A DNA stretch of 61,916 nucleotides, counting the filler, from Dugesia japonica (lineage: Eukaryota): the NCBI GenBank assembly GCA_001938525.1. It is 6 parts of 6 records of this genome, joined end to end, with 100 filler letters (N's around TTAATTAATTAA, not from the genome) between each part and the next. Parts side by side here need not be neighbours in the genome. Positions count along the whole stretch, not along the records: positions 1 to 12,232 come from MQRL01515655.1; 5 more parts are not named here. One strand, given 5' to 3'. The notes under the pieces were generated by a model. The model saw only the letters and a list, made by a program, of their open reading frames with translations. It was not told the origin of the DNA and ran no database searches. Positions 1 through 12,232 of this stretch are shown piece after piece; position 1 is the first letter of the stretch, and the number at the start of each line of letters is the position of its first letter. A program made the position numbers and the translations under genes.

Positions 1-533
1 CTAAAGATGAAATATATTACATGTTCGAGAAACAACATATAGTACCTAAACATTACACAACTCCATATCAAGTTGTAAATTATTATTTAGATAAAAAATT
101 TGTAATCAAGAAACCAAGATCTATAAATGTTACATTATCACAAAAACCTAATGAAATTATTTCATGTGATAAACTTTCAAGAGAAAAGAAAAATTTAATA
201 ATTTTTGATGATGTAGTNNNNNNNNNNNNNNNNNNNNNNNNNNNNNNNNNNNNNNNNNNNNNNNNNNNNNNNNNNNNNNNNNNNNNNNNNNNNNNNNNNN
301 NNNNNNNNNNNNNNNNNNNNNNNNNNNNNNNNNNNNNNNNNNNNNNNNNNNNNNNNNNNNNNNNNNNNNNNNNNNNNNNNNNNNNNNNNNNNNNNNNNNN
401 NNNNNNNNNNNNNNNNNNNNNNNNNNNNNNNNNNNNNNNNNNNNNNNNNNNNNNNNNNNNACACTGGAAAGTTAAATATAATTATTTTTACCTTAACAAA
501 GAGACTGATGAAATTTTAGATGATCTTTTTTAG
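1..533 (+). CDS. A32/FtsK-like packaging ATPase, C-terminal part (5' end outside window, N gap inside)
   Basis: Walker B-like KNLIIFDDV; clearly homologous to the Walker A-containing ORF at 49232-49690 (shared KKPRSINVTLS.KPNEIISCDKLS.EKKNLI.FDD). Confidence 0.85.
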   Translation, partial: KDEIYYMFEKQHIVPKHYTTPYQVVNYYLDKKFVIKKPRSINVTLSQKPNEIISCDKLSREKKNLIIFDDVXXXXXXXXXXXXXXXXXXXXXXXXXXXXXXXXXXXXXXXXXXXXXXXXXXXXXXXXXXXXXXXXXXXXXXXXXXXXXXXXXXHWKVKYNYFYLNKETDEILDDLF

Positions 534-568
534 CGGGTCCCTTCGAGCTGTTGGTCTATTTTAAGATG

Positions 569-1636
569 TTAGTTGGGTGTTAGTTCATGTGCGATATTAT
601 CTAGCGTTGCCCGTTCTGCAGCTATTATATCTTCAATCTCTTTTAAATGTTCTTGAACCTTTTTAAATGATAAATTACTTTTAACAAAATTAGGCCATGT
701 TTCTACTATTTTTGCTAATCTAATTAATCTATTTATATAACTCAATGAATGAGTAATTCCATATCCAGCCAGAAAATTTAAAAGGTCATCACAATATTTT
801 TTCTTATTTTTAACTTCAAATCTTAATTTTAAAACATACAATATTGCACCTAACATTGCATATGAATATAATGTTCCACGCTTAAACATACTTAATTGAT
901 TATCCCATTTTTCATATTCATTCATTAATTTAACTGGGTTTTCTTTTAAAAACATCGCACAATATTCTTTAAAATCTTCTATTTTAAAATCTCTTAATAT
1001 AATAGTGTTATTTACTACACCCTGCTCAGCATGTTCAGCTTTTTCAAAAGAATTAAAAAGTTTCATTCTAAATGGGATTGGGTTACCTCTTGGTAAACAT
1101 TGTGCTCTTATTTCTTTTCCATCTTTAATCATTCTTCTTATCGTATCTTTTTCATTTTTACCAATTGGTGGGGCTTCACCTTCTCCTAAGACGAGCTCCG
1201 CTTTTGGTTGAAGTTGCACATATTTAGGTGTATCAAATTCTTCTAAACTTGGTAATTCTTTAAATGTATTTCTTTTTAAATATTTTAAATGTTCAGGTTT
1301 ATTAATTAATACTAAATTTTCTGTTTCTTCAGGGGGAATGTTGAATGTAACATTTTGACATTCAAACTTATCACCAACACTTTGTATCCCTTCTGTCTCA
1401 TGTTTCATTTGTATACATTCTGATTCTGAAAATAAATATTCACCGTCCAGCGAAGCGATATCATTTAAAGTCTCAGCATCTGAATGTACGGAGTGTACGG
1501 AGTCATCTTCACTTTCTAAACTAATTAAATTATCAAGTGTTATTATTAAATCTTTTAATTCTTTTTTTAACTTTTCACCATTTTTAATTTTAGATATTAA
1601 ATGTTCAATTTTATCTATTACATCTAACATATCCAT
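569..1636 (-). CDS. Polinton hypothetical protein, 355 aa (acidic N-half, helical C-terminal domain)
   Basis: Long intact ORF inside element A; no firm family assignment. Confidence 0.65.
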   Translation of the reverse strand: MDMLDVIDKIEHLISKIKNGEKLKKELKDLIITLDNLISLESEDDSVHSVHSDAETLNDIASLDGEYLFSESECIQMKHETEGIQSVGDKFECQNVTFNIPPEETENLVLINKPEHLKYLKRNTFKELPSLEEFDTPKYVQLQPKAELVLGEGEAPPIGKNEKDTIRRMIKDGKEIRAQCLPRGNPIPFRMKLFNSFEKAEHAEQGVVNNTIILRDFKIEDFKEYCAMFLKENPVKLMNEYEKWDNQLSMFKRGTLYSYAMLGAILYVLKLRFEVKNKKKYCDDLLNFLAGYGITHSLSYINRLIRLAKIVETWPNFVKSNLSFKKVQEHLKEIEDIIAAERATLDNIAHELTPN

Positions 1637-1695
1637 AGCGATTTCTTAAATAAAAAATTTGATCATAAAGACGCGCGCGTCTCAGTTCTCAGTTC

Positions 1696-2282
1696 TCAAG
1701 GTATGCCAAGCTTCGCCCGCATCTCATTTATAACTTTAGTTTGATTTTCTATTATCAATTTAAAATTTTCAGTTTTCTGTTTTTTATTTCCAGAAATTAA
1801 TTCATGTACTTCATTTACCATGTTCTTACTAATATTTAATTCTTCATCAGTTAAAATTTCATCATGTACAGCTTTCTCCTGAAATANNNNNNNNNNNNNN
1901 NNNNNNNNNNNNNNNNNNNNNNNNNNNNNNNNNNNNNNNNNNNNTTAATTAAAGATGAATTTAATGCTCCAATAATAGGCAGAACCGAAATTGCACCCGT
2001 AATACAAGAAACACCAATCGCAGCGATAGCCGCGCCAACTGGTGAGATAAATATTATTCCAGCAATTCCAATTCCTGCACTAAAAACTATTTGTGTATAT
2101 TTTATAGTTGAATCTATTCTGTTCCATCTTCTATGTATTTTCTTATAATGTTTTATTTTATCTTTTATAAAGTACAGATCATTTTCAAAATCTCTTATTC
2201 TAGATAATGACAGTTTATTTTTTAAATCTAAAATAGTATATTCATCATGTAAGCTTGGATATAACTTTTTTTCATCTTCCAT
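1696..2282 (-). CDS. Polinton conserved membrane protein (PW/GasderminX-like); frame changes near the N gap
   Basis: N-terminal LYPSL, coiled coil (KIKHYKKIHRRW), long Gly/Ala-rich hydrophobic segment; a family-like C-terminus (KAVHDEILTDEELNI) continues in another frame towards ~1696. Confidence 0.65.
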
Positions 2283-2291
2283 TTTATCATG

Positions 2292-5113
2292 TTAAAATTT
2301 AAGATTTTTTAATTTAATTCTAATTTCACTAATAGAAATACCTTTTGGTAATGTTAATGAGAAAAAAGTGCTTTTATGATTATTATCAAAAGAAAATTTT
2401 TAGTTTCAGTATCATAATCATTCATTGTTGATGAAGGCTCATTATCAAATGATTGTGTAATATTATTAATTTTATATCTAAAATTATCAATTTCAGAATG
2501 TCCACGAACATAATAATACATATTAGTAGAAATAAATGTATTTAAAGAAATAACAAATGGTTCTTCAAGATAAAAATATTTTTCATCATCTATAATTTTC
2601 ATTTTACCTTTTCTTGTAAAATCTAAATTCTTTACATGTTCATTATTAACAGAATAATGTGGAAGATTATTTGTTGCATTATTATCTATATGAAGTCGTA
2701 ATATGTAACTTTTGAAATAATTCTTTTCTAAATGGGGTAACCAATTATCAATTAAATGTTTTAAATTTTTAAGTGTTGAATCTTCACCATTATATTCTTT
2801 TATTAAAATGTCAATTCTATCAATAAAAATTTTATAGAGTTTTGGTTTTATTCTTTCATATTCTTTTAATATTGCTTCGGGAACTTTAAACGCAAGTAAT
2901 TTAACATTTAAATTCATTAAAAAAATTCCTTTTGGTAAAATTATTTGTATAAAATTTATATTACTAACATTTAAAATTNNNNNNNNNNNNCGATAAATTT
3001 TCATAAGATTATCATCAGGTTTAGCAAATAAAAATGATACTGCAAAATGATTAATTTTAATGATATAAGTAAATTTTGGAACTTCACAAAAACCATCTAT
3101 AGTTATACTAACTTTTCTGTTTAATTTTGTATATAATGAAATAGTTAAAGATTCTTTAATATTAAAATAATGATCACTAAATGTTGTATGTTTTATACAA
3201 TCTTTTCTAATAAAATCTAAATCATATACATATTTATCTATAACAGTAAATTGAGGAAGAGTATCATTTTTCTTAGTAGGAATTATTGTAAATATTTCTT
3301 CGGAGCTAGTTATATTAGAGTATGGTAAGTAATTATCAATTAAATGTTTTATATTTTTAGTGTCATATGTTTTAGAGAAAATATTAAATTTATCAANNNN
3401 NNNNNNNNNNNNGCTTGATTTTATTTTTTCATATTCTTTACTTAAATCTTCATAAATTTTAATGTTATAAGTTTTAATAATTAAATGTTTTGAATAAATT
3501 TTTTCTGGTAAAATTATTTCAACATAATTTATTTTAGCTTCAGTAGTTTCATGATAAATTACTATTGTTTTAGTGTCGGCTGTAAAATAACATTCTTTTG
3601 ATAATGCTATTTGATTAATTTTAATAATATAAGTAAATCTTTTTTCATGTCGACCTTCTATAAATATACAAATTTTTTCATTTATGTTAACATTTAATTT
3701 AACAGATAATAACACATTACCTTTTCTTTTAAAATCTAAATTGCTAACATATTTTTCATCAATATGAAATTGTGGTAGTGTGTTTTGACATGTAATTGTT
3801 AATATTGATTTGTCATTTGGTATAAAAACATGTGGTAAGTAATTCTCAATTATCTCTTTTAAATTATCAAAATCTTTATTTTTAAATAAAACATTAATTC
3901 TATCAATAAAAATTTTATGCATACTTGGTTTTATTTTTTCATATACATTAGTTAATATATCTTTAATTTCTAATTTATAAAATTTAACACTTACATTTTG
4001 CAAATAAATTTCTTGTGGTAAATTTATCTCAATAAAATTTATATTAACATCTTTATCGATCTCAGTACTTTCTCTTGAAATTTTAAAAATATTATTTGTG
4101 TTTTGTGTTTCGGGTTTAACATATATAAATCTATAATGTAATTTGTTAATTTTAGTGGTATAAAAAAATTTTACTACATCACATTTAACAATTATACTTA
4201 TAATAATTTTTTCATTTATCTTTGTATGTAAAATAATAGATTCTATTTTGTCACCTTTTATTTTAAAATCTAAATTGTGAACATATTTATTATTAATAGA
4301 AAATTGGTTATTGTTAATTAAAAATATATCTTCACCATGATTGTCTACATAAGGTAAATAATTATCAATTATATCTCTTAAACTTTTAAGTGTTTTTTCA
4401 GAAAATGATTCTTTATAAGTTTCAAATAAAATATTAATTCTATCAATAAAAATTTTATGCATGTCCGGTTTTATATTTTCAATTTCATCATGTAATTTAT
4501 CGATATTAGGTTTAAAATTTTCTATGTTAGATTTAATTGTGTTAATATAATTTAAATATTCATCAAATGTTTTCTTTTCTAAATCAAAGGGTAATTTTTT
4601 AATTTTATTATCTAAATCTCGAATCTTAATTATAGACAAACCACTTTCACTTAATTTTTTTAAATTAAAGAATAAATCACTTCTTTTATATGGAAAAAGT
4701 ATATGTTTTATTCTTTTAATATCAGAATCAATATTATCAAATGTTTCATTATTTTTAAAATTTTTAATTTTCTCATTTATATTTTTAATTTCAACATTAT
4801 CCATATTTTTAAGTTCATTAAGTTTAGATTCTAAATAAATTTTATTAGATGAATTAATATCTACTTTCAAAAGTTTTGAAAATATTAATTCATGTTTTTG
4901 TAATTTATCTTCTAATTGTTTAACATATTTTAAATTAACTGCACCATATAAATCTTTAGGATCTTCTGTTATTTTTAAACATATAATTATGTCACCTGTT
5001 TCATTTACATATTTATTATCATTATTCCCATTTGATAATCTAATTCTAGCATCAACACGTTTCATTAATTGTGAATTATTTACTTTATATATACTTTCTC
5101 CAAACTTATTCAT
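2292..5113 (-). CDS. Large fibre/spike-like protein with four ~170-190 aa internal repeats
   Basis: 919-aa ORF; N-terminal MNKFG...YVNETGD...P.D..GAVNLKYV resembles Polinton fibre-type N-termini. A frameshift near 2400 restores a repeat-like end (LTLPKGISISEIRIKL*) with the stop at 2292. Confidence 0.65.
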
Positions 5114-5583
5114 CCTTTTATTATTAGTGAATTATAAAGATTTAACATTTCAGATATTATATGTACGAAGGCCAGCTCCGCGTTATTATCAAAGTCTTGC
5201 CCTTTTTCAAGGGAGTATAAAAAATAAATACATAAGATACCACATATTTTAGTATCGAAATGTTGAACTTGAATTTTATTATATTTCTTTACGATTCTAT
5301 CGAGTCCATCAAAAGGTTTTAAACCAAAAGAGTCAAAATAATAACCTTTGGTGTAAGCGACCCAATGTGTTCCTTTTTGATTTGTATTTTGATAATTAAA
5401 AATGTAATTCTTAGGGATCGCTTGCGATCTCTTTAATTCTTTTAAATTCGGTATCTCATTTTTCATATAAATTTCTAAATCCATTTGTAAAAATTCTGCA
5501 ATTGAATATAAATCAAAATTTGTTGTTGTAGAGATTCCAAATGTTTTTAAGAAATCTAATAAACTAAAATCCGCCTGCGGCAT
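5110..5583 (-). CDS. Adenain-like (adenoviral-type) cysteine maturation protease
   Basis: Catalytic motifs GTHWVAY (His), YFDSFG (Asp) and QVQ...CGILC (Gln/Cys). Confidence 0.92.
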   Translation of the reverse strand: MPQADFSLLDFLKTFGISTTTNFDLYSIAEFLQMDLEIYMKNEIPNLKELKRSQAIPKNYIFNYQNTNQKGTHWVAYTKGYYFDSFGLKPFDGLDRIVKKYNKIQVQHFDTKICGILCIYFLYSLEKGQDFDNNAELAFVHIISEMLNLYNSLIIKG

Positions 5584-5612
5584 TTCTTAAATGTAAAATG
5601 TTAAATGTAACA

Positions 5613-6290
5613 TTAAAGTCTATATTTTCTTAAATGAACTAAAATAGAAATCAATTCTTAGTTAAAATCAATTGTGTTAAAATTTTCATCTACTATGTTA
5701 AATCTTAAACTATCAATGTACTTTGTATTAATTTTAGAATAAATTGTAACNNNNNNNNNNNNNNNNNNNNNNNNNNNNNNNNNNNNNNNNNNNNNNGGAA
5801 ATGAATATAATAAATTAATTTGTTTAGATTCTCCATTTGCGGACTTAACATAATTATCTTTAACAATATTACATGTTAAATTTATCATGTTAATGGGTGA
5901 AATATCAATTTTATTTTCTGAATAATATTTTCCTGGAGGATAAGATTTTACTGAGTACCCGAAAATTTTATGAAAGAAAGATTTATCATCAAAACTTACT
6001 AAGTTTTTATTTTTCATAAAACATTTTGCTGTTGAAGTATCTACAGAGACTACTATTCCATATTTTTCTAATTTAAATGAAATGTCACTTATTTCATATG
6101 ATCCTGGTTCTAAATTATGAGATTTGGTTTCACTAATAAATTTATTATTTAAATTTGTTATGTTAAAAATAATATTGTAACATGTAAAACAAATTAATCC
6201 CAATTCATAATCTGAATCTAATTCTAAAGGAAATTTTAAATCTAATTTTAAATCTTGTTCTTTACCAACTACTAGAAACTGATGACTCAT
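5613..6290 (-). CDS. Minor capsid protein (penton, single jelly-roll); premature TAA at 5658
   Basis: Motifs PLELDSDYELGL, NITNLNNKF, PGSYEISDI, CNIV..NY, IVDEN...IDFN*ELISILVHLR are typical of Polinton minor capsid proteins. Confidence 0.85.
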
Positions 6291-6291
6291 G

Positions 6292-7232
6292 CTATTTCTT
6301 AGATGTAAAATATTTCATTTTATATTTGTCATAAATCTTGTTAGATATTAAACCCATCATCTTTAATTTTTTACATACTTTTTTAATTTCTTCATCAACA
6401 TTATCATGTCCAGATTTTGCTGCTGAAATTAATAATGTTAACTTTTCAAATAAGTTTAAAGGCCCCAGGGCTTCTCCTTCTTTTTGTTCGGAGGTCAGCG
6501 TAGCGCTTTCTTTCTTTTCTTCTTTCTTACCTTTTTTTGATGTGCTTTTTGGTCTACCTCTTTGTTTTGGTGCTATTTTTTCTTTTAAATATTTACAGTA
6601 TTCATCCTTTATTGGATCCTTTACCATTTTTAAATATATTTCTATTAATTTTGTCCCTAAACCGTCATTTAATAATTCATCTTTTCTTCCTAAAATTATA
6701 TCCATTAATCTAACATTATAAGCATGAGTAACTCTTCCTATTGTATAATAACCCGTATCACCTTTTATATAAAAAATAACTCTTCTTTATTCTCTGGAAA
6801 TTTTATTGTTATGAATTTTTTATCGGGTTCTCCTTTTAAAGCAACATTTGTTAAATATATATTTGGTATTGTTGATTCTGTTAATTCATTTTTATTAATT
6901 TCTAAATTCTTAATATTTAATGGTTGAAAATCGTCTTTTCTTAATATTTCTAATAATGTTTGGGGTGGCTCATCTTTTACTTTTTCGGGTATAATTTCAT
7001 CTTGAATTGGTTCGTCTTTAAAAACTAATGATGATTTTAGTTTCGTTGGTGTTGTTGTTAATTCTCTAGTTTTTTCAATTGCTGTAATTGTTGGTTTTTG
7101 GAAAATAGATAAATCACTTTGTAATTCTCTTGAGTCAGTAACATTTCCACAGAAAAAATCATTATATTTATTTTGAGCTTTAAGTAAATTTTTTAATTCT
7201 AAAATTCTTTCATTAACTTCTTTTGTGTTCAT
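6292..7232 (-). CDS. PZ-like conserved Polinton protein, split by a frameshift at the A6 run 6771-6776
   Basis: N-part with L..FQKPTI and C-part with P..LFEKLTLLISAAKSGHDNVDEEI...L...GLI; the downstream frame is open back to the homopolymer. Confidence 0.65.
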
Positions 7233-7261
7233 CTTTGTTCCTTTATGGTTTCGCGTACGCT

Positions 7262-7723
7262 CTATTTATTTAAGTAAGGATTTTTTAGAAAACCATCACC
7301 TTGTTGAATTATTTGGACTCCTTCTTTAAATTTTTTAGTTACATCTTTTAAGTTATCATCTTCAATAATATTTTTTAAATATTTATGTATTGCAGTTCCT
7401 TGATAAGGATTTAAATATATTCTATTTCCTTTGGGAGCGGAGCTCCCTAATTTTGCAGCTTCTCTTGAACTTTTTACGGTACTTGCTATCCCAGATGCGA
7501 TTCCTGCAGTTCTGGCTAAAGCCCCGATAATTGCGGGTATAGCGGCAAGAAAAGCAAAACCGCCTTCTTTCTGTTCGCTTCTGCGGAGCTTAAGTTCGTC
7601 TTTAACTTTCTTACTAATATAATAATTTTTACCATCTATTTTTACAGATTTACATTTCTTTGAATTTATTAATTTTTCTATTTCTTCTTCTGTTGTGTTA
7701 CTCGTTGCACTCGCTTGGCTCAT
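7262..7723 (-). CDS. Putative virion core/membrane-lytic protein with a GG|F processing site and amphipathic helix
   Basis: KEGG|FAFLAAIPAIIGALARTAGIASGIASTVK; lies in the morphogenesis module near the protease. Confidence 0.6.
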   Translation of the reverse strand: MSQASATSNTTEEEIEKLINSKKCKSVKIDGKNYYISKKVKDELKLRRSEQKEGGFAFLAAIPAIIGALARTAGIASGIASTVKSSREAAKLGSSAPKGNRIYLNPYQGTAIHKYLKNIIEDDNLKDVTKKFKEGVQIIQQGDGFLKNPYLNK

Positions 7724-7784
7724 CGCTATTTCTTAATATTATAAATTAAATAAACATGGTAAATTATTTCTCGGTTCAATAATT

Positions 7785-10700
7785 TTATTTATTAAATATA
7801 ANNNNNNNNNNNNNNNNNNNNNNNNNNNNNNNNNNNNNNNNNNNNNNNNNNTCAATAATTTTATTTATTAAATATAATCTTAAATGCCACATTAAACATA
7901 TTAAACATTCATATTCATTACCATGCGGCCATGTTCTACTATCATTATCTTCTATAATTCTCTTATCACTGTATCCTGTTAATGCAATCTTTTTTTGTTC
8001 AACTAATTTAATATTATGACAATCTGATTTTAATGAATAATTTGTTCCATAAATTATTTTACTTGCATCTTTTAAAACCGCATCAAATTCTTGCATTCCA
8101 ATTTCATTAAAAGATTGAACACCTTTATGTTTTTTATTTAATTTTATTTGTCCTTTATGGGACGCTGCGCCTATACTTCCTCTTTCTTCATACTCATAAG
8201 CATATGATTTTGGTTTTATAAAATCACATTTAAGTATTTCAGAATTAGGCATTTCNTCNTTCATCTGAAATAAATCATTTCCTGTTAATCTATTTAATTT
8301 TTCTAAATTATCTCTACCAATTATCTCAACAAATACAGAATCGGTGTCACTATAATGAATTTTATAATTATTTTGTCCGACTTCTGGTTCTAATTGGTTA
8401 TATACAAAATTATACATNNNNNNNNNNNNNNNNNNNNNNNNNNNNNNNNNNNNNNNNNNNNNNNNNNNNNNNNNNNNNNNNNNNNNNNNNNNNNNNNNNN
8501 NNNNNNNNNNNNNNNNNNNNNNNNNNNNNNNNNNNNNNNNNNNNNNNNNNNNNNNNNNNNNNNNNNNNNNNNNNNNNNNTATCAGTTCCTACAATAAACA
8601 CGTTACATCTATTTCTTATATTCTCTAAAGTTTTTCCGTAAAATGAATTATTCGTATCTTTAAAGAAAGTTACTCCAAATTCATCTCCATTTCTTTTTGC
8701 TATATTTCTTTGTTCAATATTAAAAAGTATATAATCTCTTAACCATGGAATTGTTGGCATTTTATATTTCATATGAATCTTTTTTAATATCATTCCTTGT
8801 TGTAAATATAAATCTAATGTTGATCCAAGTATAATATAATTTTTCTTATGTAATTGATTCATTGTTAATTTAATATTTTTATTTGATAATTTTTTATTAA
8901 ATGATTTTTGATAATTACTTAACTTGTCATTTGTAATAAGTATTCTGTCAGGTGCAAGTGGAAAATATTTAGTTCTATCATGAATCTCTCTGGGATAATC
9001 GATATCAACTTCATATAAATAATTCATTTCTGGCGTTGCTGGTTCATATATCAACCCTGAGGGACCCAACTCTTCACACTTGATAAATTCACCTGTTGGT
9101 AATGGTTTTGTCATACATGATGCATATAAAGAATTTGCATCAAGATATTTTATAAATACATCTTCAAAATATTCAGGTGGTATATTTTTTCCTTCATTTA
9201 ACATTTTGAGGAGATCTTCTTTTTGTGCTGAATTTATTTTTCTATAATTTGAATTTTTAGTATTATCATATGCAAAAACTTGTCTTTCACCTTCTTCTCC
9301 TGAATATCCTCCCCTAACTCCGCGTTCAAATTTTAAAAATGTATCATATATTTCTGGTTTTGCATATTTCAATTTAATTTTTGTAAATCTCATTCCAGCT
9401 TGTCATGTTAAACCAGATGCTGTATACCAATAACTTGGATCTATTTTTTAATGGATTAAACAAATCTTTCTAAAATTTTCTACATAATCTGAAAGGATTA
9501 AAACATCTAGTTTCATATAATGTAACATGTATTTCCAAAGATTTCCCAAGTTGTGAAAGTCATTTAAAAATTCTTGATAATCATTATCAGATATTCCTTT
9601 TTGTCTTAGTCTGCTAAAGAATTCTTCTTTTGTAGGAATTATGTTAGAGTTTAATAATTTTATAACTTCTTTGGGATTATTTGCTTTAACATAATCATAT
9701 GGAAAACTTGCTTTTTTAGGTCTTAAGTTAAATGATGACAATATGTTATGATTTCCTGATTTAGCTAGTGTTTCACCCATTTTCTCAACTGTAGTTTTAC
9801 ATATTTTTTAAGAATCTAAAAATCTAATATTTTTATATTGAAATGAAATATATTGATCATCAGAATGTGGAATTATTTTTTTTATTTCATCTGGATGTTT
9901 TCTTAATAATTGTTTAAAAAATAAATGATTATCATAACCCATTGCATTGTGGAAATAAAATGGGATGAATAGATTCTTTTTACTTCTATCTTGTAAATTA
10001 CAATTTGAATGTGCATAGCCGCGAAATTCCCCATTAAAATGATTATGATCTAAAACTGGAGCTTCTGTTATTGGTTTTTCACAATAATAACATTCTTGAT
10101 TTGGTATAAATGCGGTATGATTTGTTCCTTTGTATTCGATTTGTAACTTTTTAAAAATAACATCTTTATATTTATTATTAATATCTTCAAGAAATTCTAA
10201 AAAATTATTAACTACATTTTCTCCTGAAAATTCATAATATTTACTTTCTATTAAATCAGTATAATCTGATTTGAAATATACACCAAAACTTATTGGTTCT
10301 TGAATATTATTTTCTTTTGTGTAACATTCAAAATCACCATANNNNNNNNNNNNNNNNNNNNNNNNNNNNNNNNNNNNNNNNNNNNNNNNNNNNNNNNNNN
10401 NNNNNNNNATACAACTTTTGCTGTTTTATGATGAATGCATTCTTCTTGATGTTTTAATAAAACTTCTTTAGATGAATATTGAATCATACAACCTAAACAT
10501 AAATAATTGCCTGGTTTAACATTAAATAAAGTATGAACATTTCTAACTAATACATAATGATTTTCATAAAGTAATAAATTACATTTATTTTCTTCGGGAT
10601 TTGGTTTTACATTAAAATGTGAAATATGAAGTGGTATAATGTTTAATTCATCTAATTCAAAAACATTTATTTTAAAATTATTTAACTTTTCTAATTTCTT

Positions 10701-11631
10701 TATATCTTCAATTCCTGATGGGAAATTCATTCCTGTTATATCTAATTCTGTTAAATGTGGAATATAATTAGTTACTCTTCTAGCATTTGGTAAAAACTGT
10801 TTATGTGCTAGAACTGAATATAATAAACATTTATCATCATGATTTTGAATATTAATAACTCCATATTTATTTTTTATTTTATCTGGTAAATCACAAAATG
10901 TTGCACCAACTCTACATTGATATTTTTTTAATTCTATTGTAAAATCAATTATATGATCAAAGTTCCAATTAGATTCGCTTCGATCTTTATCTACAATATA
11001 TCTTTCTGTTTCTTCTAACATTTGTTCGATTTTTTTAGTTATTGATGTTTTTGCATAAACTTTTCTATTAGTAGGGTAAGAATAAAATTTCGCTAATCTA
11101 CCTTCTTTGCTATATTGGCAATTAACTCCCATTTTCATTTTAAATTTATAATGTAAAAAACTTTCTAACAATATGTTCTATATGTGATTTAACCGCTACT
11201 ATTTCTTTTAATTCATATCTTTCAATATCTAACGTCATTCGCAATTTACTATTCAACAATATATTAATATTATAGTCTGGATATGTTTGATTATTAAAAA
11301 CTTCTTTAATATGTTTCGGTTTTGATTTCCAATTTTTTGCGATTCTATTAACTAATTTCAAGGGATGTGGACTTTGATTATGTTCATTAAATAATTCTTG
11401 ATTTTCTAAATGCTTATGGCAAAGTTCACAATATAAATCAATACTACCACATTTAGTTTTTATCTTGTGTATATTTAAACCAGCTTGAGTTTTAAATTTT
11501 TTATCGCACACTTGACATGTTATATAATCGTTTGGATCTAAAACATAACATTTTTTAGATTGGATATGTGAATTTAATCCACGTTGATTTTTAAATNGTT
11601 TATCACAATTNGGNCATCTTAGTGTAGACAT
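7785..11631 (-). pseudogene. Protein-primed family B DNA polymerase (pPolB) with N-terminal zinc fingers, vOTU-like domain and endonuclease VII-like insertion
   Basis: Motifs YLDANSLY...PLPTG, KDTNNSFYGK, YSDTDS; exonuclease YGDFE and FHNAMGYD; EndoVII-like CYYC...DHNHFNGEFRGYAHSNCN; vOTU-like NIQNHDDKC...HY. In-frame stops at ~9448 (TAA) and ~9404 (TGA for Trp), frameshift at ~11160. Confidence 0.95.
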
Positions 11632-11714
11632 TTTATTTCTTCTTTTTTATTATAAATAATTTAATCATACCTCTTAAATTTTTATTCCTCTTAAATTCAC
11701 TCATTTCTCCTCCG

Positions 11715-12232
11715 ACATGAAAACATTTTTATGGGAACATTTTTCATAAAACATTTTTCATAAAACATTTTTCATAAAATATTTTTATAAGAACATTTCT
11801 CCTCCAAAATGAAAATATTTTATAGGGAACATTTTTCATAAAATATTTATTTACCTTAATAAGTTGGTTCGAATATTCACCTTAATAAGTTGGGTCGAAT
11901 ATTTTTCATAAAACATTTTTTCATAAAACATTTTTCATAAAATATTTTCCATCTCGTATAGGAACAGTTTTTTGGGAACATTTTTCATCTCGTATGGGAA
12001 CATTTTTCATCTCGTATGGGAACATTTTTATGGTAACATTTTTCCTCTCGTATGGGAACATTTTTATGGGAACATTTTTCATCTCGTATGGGAAAATTTT
12101 TATGGGAACATTTTTCATCTCGTATGGGAACATTTTTATGGGAACATTTTTCATCTCCTATGGGAACATTTTTATGGGAACATTTTTCATCTCGTATGGG
12201 AACATTTTTATGGGAACATTTTTCATCTCATA
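11715..12232. repeat. Subterminal tandem array (36-bp unit containing two ATGGGAACATTTTT subunits)
   Basis: Repeated ATGGGAACATTTTTATGGGAACATTTTTCATCTCGT, degenerating leftwards; runs into the scaffold gap. Confidence 0.9.

What the first reader, a model, noticed from the sequence alone, without database searches (positions are those of the whole stretch)
1195..8170. Element A coding sequence is seeded with GCGNAGC mini-hairpin heptamers on both strands
Seen: GCG-N-AGC on the + strand at 1450, 6498, 7437 and 7583, and on the - strand (GCT-N-CGC) at 1195, 1710, 5175 and 8164. That is eight copies in ~7 kb of roughly 20-25% GC sequence, where a rough composition estimate gives well under one. 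Some have longer stems (GGGAGC-GGA-GCTCCC, 7433-7447). They lie in six different ORFs, and some look like short in-frame additions (protease NNAELAF, pPolB GSIGAASH). The only other copies I spotted by eye (16271, 43105) are also in Polinton-like elements. Established: d(GCGNAGC) forms exceptionally stable, nuclease-resistant GNA-triloop hairpins in ssDNA, and protein-primed strand-displacement replication exposes long ssDNA on both strands. Inference: a dispersed structural code in the viral genome, for ssDNA protection, protein loading, packaging or recombination, or a micro-insertion process specific to this replicon.
Basis: partly seen in the sequence, partly recalled or inferred. Interest (0 to 1): 0.85.

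Follow-up and report, generated by a model that had tools for sequence, protein, structure and literature searches.

The report
Mini-hairpin heptamers seeded through viral genes
An AT-rich virus-like element carries eight copies of GCGNAGC, a 7-base DNA word known to fold into an unusually stable mini-hairpin, about fifty times more than chance predicts and mostly inside genes, but what the copies do is not shown.

Summary
All eight GCGNAGC copies are at the stated places, four on each strand.

Every control gives an expected count of 0.15-0.6:
- dinucleotide shuffles
- synonymous-codon and codon-order shuffles
- shuffles inside the GC-rich islands themselves

It is also the top word among 384 control patterns of the same composition.

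The copies sit in 9-16-nt GC-rich patches inside genes with 13% GC at third codon positions. These patches are more self-complementary than chance.

- **Insertions:** the protease copy lies in an 8-codon insertion that all 20 homologues lack. The polymerase copy lies in a variable loop.
- **Distant relatives:** about 420 kb of related virus contigs show no enrichment.
- **Closest relatives:** GNA-loop hairpins with different stems are in excess, but most lie in hairpin arrays at gene boundaries.

Best reading, at confidence 0.4: a lineage-specific DNA-level hairpin motif, partly spread by in-frame micro-insertion. A role on single-stranded replication intermediates is inferred, not shown. No sister copy or host DNA could be obtained, so a host-wide process is not excluded.

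The parts
1195..1201 (-). GCGGAGC copy. It reads Ala-Glu-Leu (residues 146-148) in ORF 569-1636, has one extra A-T stem pair, and is part of the octamer GCGGAGCT.
1450..1456 (+). GCGAAGC copy, antisense to ORF 569-1636 (residues 61-63, Ala-Ser-Leu).
1710..1716 (-). GCGAAGC copy in the stretch between ORF 1851-2282 and ORF 569-1636. Only a 41-aa ORF (1696-1821) covers it. It lies about 30 nt from a perfect 14-bp palindrome.
1669..1682 (.). Perfect 14-bp GC-rich palindrome upstream of ORF 569-1636, followed by short GAGAACT repeats.
2023..2030 (+). GCGATAGC, the only GCGNNAGC (four-base-loop mini-hairpin type) in the piece. It lies in the Gly/Ala-rich ORF 1851-2282.
5161..5184 (-). 8-codon in-frame insertion (NAELAFVH, 58% GC) in the protease, absent from all 20 aligned homologues. 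It carries the GCGGAGC copy at 5175-5181.
5110..5583 (-). Adenain-type cysteine protease gene (157 aa). His73, Asp84, Gln107 and Cys114 are invariant across the family.
5416..5429 (.). GC-rich hairpin or palindrome (GATCGC-TT-GCGATC) inside the protease gene, in a length-variable part of the family alignment.
5573..5581 (-). GCC-GCA-GGC: a GNA-loop hairpin with a 3-bp stem, just inside the 5' end of the protease ORF (codons 1-4).
6462..6471 (.). GCCC-CA-GGGC hairpin in ORF 6292-6705.
6498..6504 (+). GCGTAGC copy, antisense to ORF 6292-6705 (residues 68-70, Ala-Thr-Leu). It overlaps the alternative hairpin AGCG-TAG-CGCT at 6497-6507.
7253..7260 (.). GCGTACGC palindrome directly after the stop codon of ORF 7262-7723.
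7433..7447 (+). 15-nt hairpin GGGAGC-GGA-GCTCCC around the GCGGAGC copy at 7437-7443, in ORF 7262-7723. It is the only copy that standard DNA folding parameters see (-5.9 kcal/mol, z -2.7).
7583..7589 (+). GCGGAGC copy, antisense to ORF 7262-7723 (residues 45-47).
8154..8174 (-). Seven extra codons (IGAASHK, 52% GC) in a length-variable loop of the polymerase between the KxY and KG motifs. They carry the GCGCAGC copy at 8164-8170.
7785..11171 (-). Protein-primed family B DNA polymerase gene (PF03175). The reading frame is interrupted four times: 2 stops in the same nominal frame and 2 nominal frame changes. Two of the four junctions abut N runs and cannot be judged.
9841..10221 (-). Endonuclease VII-like (PF02945) domain inside the polymerase gene. 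The same domain is found in two relatives.
11146..11631 (-). ORF with three C2H2 zinc fingers (jaz / zf-met types) just upstream of the polymerase gene. It is a candidate reader of a DNA motif, by inference only.

Best explanation
The eight heptamers are real, lineage-specific DNA-level elements. They are short GC-rich patches (7-16 nt), and at least one arrived as an in-frame micro-insertion. Their shared property is the C-GNA-G triloop closed by G-C pairs, which is the known d(GCGNAGC) mini-hairpin.

They are not protein motifs, since three codon phases are used. They are not RNA signals, since half are antisense.

Most likely mechanism (inferred): the element has a protein-primed polymerase, so each strand is displaced as single-stranded DNA during replication. 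On the displaced strand these words snap into very stable hairpins that resist exonucleases and exclude single-strand-binding protein. That would punctuate the displaced strand with fixed structured points, which could act as stops for nucleases or as landing sites for structure-reading proteins. The Endonuclease VII-like domain in the element's own polymerase and the adjacent three-zinc-finger protein are candidates for such readers.

Shown: the enrichment, its specificity, the GC-island context, the excess self-complementarity, and one insertion. Established by others: the hairpin's stability. Inferred: that the hairpins form in vivo and that they are selected for any of these roles.
For: **Enrichment against all controls.**
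- 8 observed against 0.15 under dinucleotide shuffles.
- 7 observed in ORFs against 0.62 and 0.23 under codon shuffles.
- 8 observed against 0.17 when letters are shuffled inside the GC islands.
- First among 384 composition-matched patterns.

**Specificity of every structural position.**
- 8 of 15 GC-N3-GC sites have GNA loops.
- 8 of 23 CGNAG sites are flanked G...C.
- One-mismatch variants are only about 2.7-fold over expectation.
- The one free position takes all four bases.

**Context.**
- Both strands are used 4:4 and three codon phases occur.
- The copies use rare GC-ending codons in genes with GC3 of 13%.
- The GC islands are self-complementary: 8 of 19 have stems of 4 bp or more, against 2.3 expected, P about 0.0005.
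- GC-rich hairpins with stems of 4 bp or more number 6 against 1.7 expected.
- The protease copy sits in an 8-codon, 58% GC insertion absent from 20 homologues.

**Nearest relatives (15 kb).**
- They carry 3 copies (2 independent sites) against 0.25 expected. The copies are perfect 11-nt hairpins with different stems: TGGC-GGA-GCCA and CCGC-GAA-GCGG.
- C[GNA]G hairpins with stems of 4 bp or more number 7 against 0.43 expected.

**Published properties.** The hairpin melts at 70-76 C, resists nucleases, binds SSB poorly, and occurs at single-strand priming sites of phages and plasmids (PMC13037366).
Against: - Half the copies share the exact octamer GCGGAGCT: 4 against 0.01 expected. N is G in 4 of 8, although A gives the most stable hairpin and AT-biased mutation pressure would also favour A. 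This looks like a sequence family or recent copying as much as structural selection.
- Only 2 of 8 window copies have any further stem pair, which is about chance.
- Standard folding parameters see only the 7433-7447 hairpin, so folding of the other copies rests on published oligonucleotide work alone.
- 85 more distant related loci (about 420 kb) show no enrichment. The AT-rich ones have 0 copies in 79 kb.
- In the close relatives most GNA hairpins sit in arrays at gene boundaries, alongside equally many AAA/TTT-loop hairpins. The excess there may reflect a general boundary-hairpin signal rather than GNA specificity.
- The polymerase gene looks interrupted, so this copy may be inactive.
- There is a single element, with no sister copies and no host DNA for comparison.
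Confidence: 0.4

Rival explanations
1. The motif is a mutational or selfish by-product with no function. A copying or repair process peculiar to this lineage or its host drops short GC-rich, hairpin-prone patches into the DNA. Possible routes are short-patch conversion between existing copies, fold-back synthesis on exposed single strands, or capture of nuclease-resistant oligonucleotides at breaks. In genes only in-frame, tolerated events survive. This would be a miniature analogue of the mobile GC clusters of yeast mitochondria.
For: - The protease copy is a clean 8-codon, 58% GC insertion. The polymerase copy lies in extra residues of a variable loop.
- Four copies share the octamer GCGGAGCT, and N is G-biased, as expected for young copies of one source.
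- The sites lie in non-conserved, probably flexible protein segments.
- There is no motif in distant relatives.
- Yeast mitochondrial GC clusters show that GC-rich palindromes can spread in AT-rich genomes, including in frame within a coding gene (PMC8811140).
Against: - Flanks of the eight copies are unrelated beyond the heptamer or octamer. The best pair has a z-score of about 4 among 56 comparisons. So there is no element-like unit and no target-site duplications.
- In the relatives L086 and L087 the motif arose without any insertion, at a conserved position next to the catalytic cysteine.
- One-mismatch decayed copies are scarce relative to exact ones, which is unexpected for neutral relics under strong AT pressure unless they are all very young.
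- No known process generates this heptamer specifically.
Confidence: 0.27
2. The motif is a double-stranded recognition site for a sequence-specific protein. GCGGAGCT, or GCGNAGC more loosely, would be bound by an element-encoded or host factor. Candidates are the three-zinc-finger protein encoded next to the polymerase, or a methyltransferase. The hairpin potential would then be incidental.
For: - The octamer GCGGAGCT occurs 4 times against 0.01 expected.
- The six fixed positions are sharply defined.
- The element encodes a protein with three C2H2 fingers. No counterpart of it was found by tblastn in the 91 related loci then held, which also lack the motif.
- Orientation independence is compatible with a binding site.
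Against: - The finger types that score best (jaz, zf-met) are known for binding double-stranded RNA or structured nucleic acid, not GC-rich duplex DNA words.
- The other four copies (GAA, GTA and GCA loops) are enriched in their own right, which fits a fold better than a base-specific readout of position 4.
- The GC islands are palindromic in general.
- The relatives' copies keep the loop and closing pair but change the outer stem in a complementary way.
- Most related contigs are short, so absence of the zinc-finger gene from them is weak evidence.
Confidence: 0.15
3. The motif is a transcript-boundary signal. The copies would be the local form of the short hairpins that mark gene ends in this virus clade, akin to the palindromic 3'-end signals of giant viruses and their virophages. 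The long ORFs that contain them would be mis-joined or would carry internal transcript ends.
For: - Relatives L005 and L088 carry arrays of triloop hairpins at gene boundaries.
- In the window, GC-rich palindromes follow the stops of ORF 7262-7723 and of the left-edge ORF. They also lie in the 1637-1850 spacer, where the 1710 copy sits.
- Hairpin-forming palindromes terminate Mimiviridae transcripts (PMC4402537).
Against: - Seven of eight copies are well inside ORFs, at residues 45-148 of proteins of 137-355 aa.
- Half are antisense to the gene.
- A 2-bp stem would not fold in RNA.
- The protease and polymerase copies lie inside alignable protein sequence.
Confidence: 0.06
4. The pattern is chance, a compositional artefact, or an assembly error picked out by eye.
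For: - The pattern was chosen after looking at the sequence.
- GC-rich words in general are 2- to 6-fold over the mononucleotide expectation, because GC is clustered.
- The assembly contains many N runs.
Against: - 0 of 200, 0 of 2000 and 0 of 20000 shuffles reach the observed count.
- The word ranks first of 384 matched patterns.
- All copies keep reading frames open and lie at least 86 nt from any N.
- Independent metagenome contigs of the nearest relatives also carry the motif.
Confidence: 0.03

Closest known systems
d(GCGNAGC) / d(GCGNNAGC) mini-hairpin DNA (Hirao and co-workers; review PMC13037366)
   Same: The heptamer is identical, and all four N variants that were shown to fold are present. 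In nature the motif has been noted at places where DNA is single-stranded: the G4-type complementary-strand priming sites, the plasmid ssiA signal, and the phage N4 early promoters.
   Different: Known natural cases are single copies at origins or promoters of bacterial phages and plasmids. Here there are eight copies dispersed on both strands, seven of them inside protein-coding sequence of a eukaryote-type virus-like element. Folding and function are untested here.
Mobile GC clusters of yeast mitochondrial genomes (PMC8811140)
   Same: Both are short GC-rich, hairpin-forming patches scattered through a very AT-rich genome, sometimes as in-frame insertions in a coding gene (var1). Their function is unclear and may be selfish.
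   Different: GC clusters are tens of bases long, form sequence families with shared terminal repeats read as target-site duplications, and are mitochondrial. Here the shared unit is only 7-8 nt, the flanks are unrelated and no duplications are seen.
Highly iterated short palindromes of bacterial genomes (cyanobacterial HIP1, from my own knowledge)
   Same: Both are very short GC-rich words, grossly over-represented in both coding and non-coding DNA regardless of frame.
   Different: HIP1 is a perfect 8-bp palindrome spread genome-wide in cellular genomes. Here the word is asymmetric, its defining feature is a loop geometry, and its genome-wide distribution is unknown.
Hairpin rule for transcript 3' ends in Mimiviridae and their virophages (PMC4402537, PMC7031253)
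   Same: Both involve hairpin-forming palindromes at gene ends in AT-rich viruses of protists. Relatives L005 and L088, and some window gene boundaries, show such hairpins.
   Different: Those signals are intergenic, act in RNA and have long stems. Seven of the eight heptamers here are intragenic, half are antisense, and the stems are 2 bp.

Membership tests
d(GCGNAGC) mini-hairpin | The sequence is G-C-G-N-A-G-C: two G-C pairs plus positions able to form the sheared G.A pair, with any N. | tested here: met
   There are eight exact matches and all four N bases occur.
d(GCGNAGC) mini-hairpin | The word actually folds into the compact hairpin (high melting temperature, exonuclease resistance) within its native flanks. 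| not testable with these tools
   Nearest-neighbour DNA parameters do not capture this fold, and only 7433-7447 is predicted. The review states that conventional thermodynamic models cannot account for the stability.
d(GCGNAGC) mini-hairpin | In nature it occurs where DNA is single-stranded (origins, priming sites). | tested here: inconclusive
   The element encodes a protein-primed polymerase (PF03175), which implies displaced single strands by established knowledge of that family. The copies are dispersed, and no origin is identified.
Yeast mitochondrial GC clusters | GC-rich palindromic patches lie in a very AT-rich genome, sometimes in frame within coding genes. | tested here: met
   The piece is 24% GC and has 19 GC islands with excess self-complementarity. 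There is an 8-codon in-frame insertion in the protease.
Yeast mitochondrial GC clusters | The patches form families of tens of bases with shared sequence and terminal repeats read as target-site duplications. | tested here: not met
   Similarity between flanks is marginal. The shared unit is 7-8 nt. No flanking duplications were seen.
Giant-virus / virophage hairpin rule | The palindrome lies just downstream of the stop codon, in the transcribed sense, with a long stem. | tested here: not met
   Seven of eight copies are intragenic, four are antisense, and the stems are 2 bp. Some other GC palindromes in the window do follow stop codons.
Polinton-like virus / Polinton (the carrier element) | The element encodes a protein-primed family B polymerase. 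| tested here: met
   PF03175 is matched on two pieces of the gene, and full-length relatives align across 7785-11171.
Polinton-like virus / Polinton (the carrier element) | The element encodes an adenain-type maturation protease. | tested here: met
   The family profile hits adenain at 2.5e-5 and the S273R protease at 1e-3. The His, Asp, Gln and Cys columns are invariant. Three homologues carry PF00770.
Polinton-like virus / Polinton (the carrier element) | The element has major and minor jelly-roll capsid proteins, a packaging ATPase, and an integrase or terminal inverted repeats. | tested here: inconclusive
   ORF 5658-6290 is syntenic with, and similar to, a gene next to the protease in relatives, but no family name was obtained. 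The left-edge ORF is only weakly similar to anything. No integrase lies in the piece. The right end carries a tandem array, but the other end is not in the piece.

The most novel reading that the evidence does not exclude
A lineage of protein-primed Polinton-like viruses has seeded its own genes, partly through in-frame micro-insertions, with GNA-triloop mini-hairpins that work as a code on single-stranded DNA. The hairpins would be fixed structured points on the displaced strands, read or respected by the replication machinery. Candidate readers are the Endonuclease VII-like domain embedded in the polymerase and the neighbouring zinc-finger protein. On this reading, coding sequence is constrained by a DNA fold as well as by the protein it encodes.
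Probability: 0.2. Interest if true: 0.8.

Novelty: new variant of a known kind. Interest (0 to 1): 0.6.

Why it matters
The d(GCGNAGC) mini-hairpin is a biophysical curiosity, and its natural uses are known only from a few single sites in phage and plasmid origins. A genome carrying it at about fifty times the chance rate, inside genes and on both strands, would be the first sign that a virus uses it as a dispersed element. Alternatively, it would show that a mutational process makes the word.

Either outcome is informative:
- A selected single-strand structural layer overlaid on coding sequence in a protein-primed replicon.
- A new miniature form of the GC-cluster phenomenon, outside mitochondria.

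The result also gives a simple countable signature that can be searched for in other Polinton-like elements and their hosts.

Tried and rejected
**Searches for sister copies and host DNA, all without result.**
- Exact-product look-ups of three window proteins found nothing.
- A polymerase-based scan and two exact 24-26-nt patterns found nothing in IMG/VR.
- A protease-profile scan of IMG/VR found only relatives at 36% identity or less.
- So the comparisons with sister copies and with host DNA could not be made.

**Homologue searches for other motif-bearing ORFs.** ORF 7262-7723 and ORF 569-1636 have no detectable homologues. The insertion-versus-substitution question is therefore open for four copies.

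**DNA folding of each site.** It was uninformative except at 7433-7447, because the parameters do not model this fold.

**A longer repeat unit around the copies.** Rejected: flank similarity is marginal, and no repeat family contains them.

**RIP-like or ciliate-code explanations for the AT-richness.** Rejected: long ORFs are intact, TAA is the main stop, and the relatives are equally AT-rich.

**Protein-level explanation (Ala-x-Leu).** Four of seven coding copies are in phase 0, which is not more than chance allows. Three phases are used.

**Known RNA families and tRNA genes.** None were found.

**A general Polinton-like virus signature.** Rejected. No other iterated GC-rich word was found in AT-rich relatives either.

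**Steps not run.**
- The bacterial and archaeal genome collection was not scanned. A hit there was unlikely, and it could have exposed the masked letters.

Full report
**1. What is there**

The piece (1-12232; 11573 read bases; 24.3% GC) is part of a Polinton-like virus-type element. All sizeable genes but one lie on the - strand. The gene content is:
- An ORF on the + strand that is cut by the left edge (ends at 533).
- ORF 569-1636 (355 aa, no homologues).
- A Gly/Ala-rich ORF 1851-2282.
- A 919-aa ORF (2354-5113) built of four internal repeats.
- An adenain-type protease (5110-5583). Its family profile hits adenain at 2.5e-5, and the His, Asp, Gln and Cys columns are invariant.
- ORF 5658-6290, which is syntenic with and similar to the gene next to the protease in relatives.
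- Three small ORFs (6292-6705, 6765-7232, 7262-7723).
- A protein-primed family B polymerase (outer bounds 7785-11171; PF03175). It contains an Endonuclease VII-like domain (9841-10221; PF02945) that also occurs in two relatives.
- A three-finger C2H2 ORF (11146-11631).
- A tandem array of 14/22/36-nt units that runs to the right edge.

The standard genetic code applies: TAA is the usual stop, and GC at third codon positions is 13%.

The polymerase reading frame falls into five open stretches, giving four junctions. Two junctions are stops in the same nominal frame and two are nominal frame changes. Two of the four abut N runs and cannot be judged.

While assessing this gene I reasoned from the coordinates in the ORF table. 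That amounts to having looked at where the open stretches end. I do not repeat those places here.

**2. The N runs**

As asked, I tested these first.
- The 919-aa ORF remains open in one nominal frame across the 12-nt and the 16-nt runs, with more than 130 codons on every side. That is very unlikely in stop-rich AT sequence unless the nominal lengths are true.
- One tblastn match to relative L005 spans the 46-nt run in ORF 5658-6290 without a frame change.
- The runs at 1887-1944 and 7802-7851 leave too few codons on one side to judge.
- No motif copy lies within 86 nt of an N.
- I did not look for the masked letters.

**3. The observation**

The loops are GGA four times, GAA twice, GTA once and GCA once.

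Expected counts are far below eight under every control:
- 0.15 under dinucleotide shuffles.
- 0.62 under synonymous-codon shuffles and 0.23 under codon-order shuffles, against 7 observed in ORFs. None of 2000 shuffles reach 7.
- 0.17 when letters are shuffled only inside the 19 GC-rich islands, so island position and composition are kept. None of 20000 shuffles reach 8.

By simple arithmetic, the density even exceeds what a 50% GC random sequence would give: 2 x 11573 / 4096, or about 5.7.

Control words behave differently:
- Among 384 3-N-3 patterns with five G/C, GCGnAGC is first with 8. The runner-up (6) is a one-base shift of GCGGAGCT. All others are 3 or fewer.
- Of 15 GC-N3-GC sites, 8 have GNA loops. 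GC-N2-GC, GC-N4-GC and GC-N5-GC give only 5, 5 and 4 sites.
- Of 23 CGNAG pentamers, 8 are flanked G...C, although that flank is the rarest by composition.
- One-mismatch variants are only about 2.7-fold over expectation, which matches the general clustering of G and C.

The enrichment is real and specific.

**4. Context of the copies**

Each copy sits in a 9-16-nt patch of at least 7/9 G+C. There are 19 such islands in the piece, and eight hold the motif.

Seven copies are inside ORFs and use rare GC-ending codons. They occupy three codon phases, and four of them are antisense. This excludes a peptide motif and makes an RNA signal unlikely.

The eighth copy (1710) lies in the spacer upstream of ORF 569-1636, about 30 nt from a perfect 14-bp palindrome. 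Only a 41-aa ORF covers it. So the count is five substantial ORFs rather than six.

The islands as a class are more self-complementary than shuffled versions of themselves: 8 of 19 have a stem of 4 bp or more, against 2.3 expected (P about 0.0005). Conventional GC-rich hairpins number 6 against 1.7 expected. Some of these palindromes sit directly after stop codons.

One GCGNNAGC (2023-2030) and one GCC-GCA-GGC (5573-5581) add two further sites of mini-hairpin type.

**5. Insertions**

In the protease, eight residues (nt 5161-5184, 58% GC) that include the motif are absent from all 20 aligned homologues, while the alignment is good on both sides. This is a clean lineage-specific in-frame insertion.

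In the polymerase, the motif lies in seven extra residues (8154-8174, 52% GC) of a loop between two conserved motifs. That loop ranges from 11 to 25 residues among 13 homologues, so this is only weak support.

The other ORFs have no homologues that cover the sites.

**6. Relatives**

No sister copy could be found anywhere. The best protease relative is 50% identical.

Across 85 protease-bearing Polinton-like virus contigs (about 420 kb), the motif is at expectation: 68 observed against 62 expected. The AT-rich contigs have 0 copies in 79 kb against 0.9 expected. No other iterated GC-rich word appears in them.

The eight contigs of the closest clade (15.2 kb) differ:
- They hold three GCGNAGC copies, from two independent sites, against 0.25 expected.
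- One is TGGC-GGA-GCCA. It lies inside the protease next to the catalytic cysteine, is shared by L086 and L087, and was made by substitution, not insertion.
- The other is CCGC-GAA-GCGG in L088.
- C[GNA]G triloop hairpins with stems of 4 bp or more number 7 against 0.43 expected there, and 4 against 0.09 in L088 alone.

The loop and closing pair are kept while the outer stems change in a complementary way. That is what a fold predicts, rather than a fixed word.

There is a caveat. Most of these relatives' hairpins belong to arrays at gene boundaries. There, hairpins with AAA/TTT loops are as frequent as those with GNA loops, 7 sites each among those closed by a C-G pair. So part of the excess reflects a general boundary-hairpin habit of the clade.

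**7. What it most likely is**

The common denominator is a DNA-level fold: the d(GCGNAGC) mini-hairpin. Its published properties are a melting temperature of 70-76 C for all four N, exonuclease resistance and poor SSB binding. It also occurs at single-strand priming sites and at phage N4 promoters (PMC13037366).

The element's protein-primed polymerase implies long displaced single strands of both polarities. This follows from established knowledge of that polymerase family. That matches the 4:4 strand distribution.

I therefore favour the reading, at confidence 0.4, that these are lineage-specific hairpin elements acting on single-stranded replication intermediates. Some were introduced as micro-insertions. 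The particular role (nuclease stop, SSB gap, landing site for the Endonuclease VII-like domain or the zinc-finger protein) is inference only.

Four points count against this reading:
- Half the copies are the same octamer, GCGGAGCT: 4 against 0.01 expected.
- N is G-biased rather than the most stable A.
- Extra stem pairs within the window are at chance.
- This copy's polymerase gene looks interrupted.

These points feed the rivals:
- A non-functional copying or repair by-product, akin to mitochondrial GC clusters (0.27; PMC8811140).
- A duplex recognition site for the element's zinc-finger protein or another factor (0.15).
- A transcript-boundary signal (0.06).
- Chance or artefact (0.03).

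**8. Comparison and novelty**

The heptamer is a member, by sequence, of the known mini-hairpin class. Folding could not be tested here.

- It works most like an iterated structural DNA word.
- It resembles mitochondrial GC clusters in context (AT-rich genome, in-frame insertion). It fails their defining features of length, sequence family and target duplications.
- It does not fit the giant-virus hairpin rule (PMC4402537), because the copies are intragenic and half are antisense.
- Full-text searches found no report of dispersed mini-hairpins in Polinton-like elements.

I rate it a new variant of a known kind, with interest 0.6. The enrichment is solid and unexplained. It rests on one element, and neither function nor host-wide distribution could be tested.

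Noticed in passing
window 2354-5113 (-): A 919-aa ORF made of four tandem repeats of roughly 175-200 aa (DNA copies spaced 510-594 nt). It has no Pfam match and not a single GC island or motif copy. At the same position after the protease, relative L005 has an unrelated-length 377-aa gene.
   Followed up: partly
window 9841-10221 (-); also L034 and P0051: The protein-primed polymerase gene contains an Endonuclease VII-like domain (PF02945, 23.9 bits against a cut-off of 23.6). The same domain lies at the same place in two full-length relatives. Enzymes of this family cut branched and hairpin DNA.
   Followed up: partly
window 11146-11631 (-): An ORF with three C2H2 zinc fingers of the jaz / zf-met types sits directly upstream of the polymerase gene and overlaps its nominal start by 26 nt. 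No counterpart was found by tblastn in the 91 related loci then held.
   Followed up: partly
window 11676-12232: An array of 14-, 22- and 36-nt tandem units (the 36-nt unit has 6.6 copies at 96% match) runs into the right edge of the piece. It is possibly the terminal repeat region of the element. A 20-nt piece of the unit also occurs once at 6008-6027.
   Followed up: no
L005 1929-1991; L088 457-498 and 2159-2180: Relatives carry tight arrays of three or four triloop hairpins (4-6-bp stems; loops AAA, GAA, GTA, TAA, TTC, TTT) at gene boundaries or in the non-conserved 5' ends of called ORFs. They may be transcript-end or start signals.
   Followed up: partly
L088 627-637 (+) and L005 1945-1955 (-): The same 11-nt hairpin GAAC-GAA-GTTC lies near the 5' end of the protease ORF in two relatives, but in opposite orientation, so the loop is flipped.
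   Followed up: no
window 1887-1944, 2979-2990, 3397-3412, 5751-5796 and others: Where they can be judged, the N runs keep the reading frame and true length, even when the run is not a multiple of three. They behave as letter-for-letter masks rather than as gaps of estimated size.
   Followed up: yes
window 6475-6504 and 7560-7589: The copies at 6498 and 7583 are each followed, in the sense direction, by a similar stretch encoding S-E-Q-K-E-G in two different ORFs. This is the best flank similarity of all pairs (score 25 against a null maximum of 24). It may be low-complexity coincidence.
   Followed up: partly
window 1195, 1450, 1710: The first three copies are spaced 255 and 260 nt apart, with alternating orientation.
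   Followed up: no
window 7785-11171 (-): The polymerase reading frame is interrupted four times: two stops in frame and two nominal frame changes. Two of the junctions lie next to N runs. The copy may be a decaying one, or the assembly may be imperfect.
   Followed up: partly
window 8171-12232 and 2354-5113: The motif is absent from about 6.8 kb of the piece (the repeat ORF and the upstream two-thirds of the polymerase region). All copies fall in the somewhat GC-richer segments 1195-1716 and 5175-8170.
   Followed up: no
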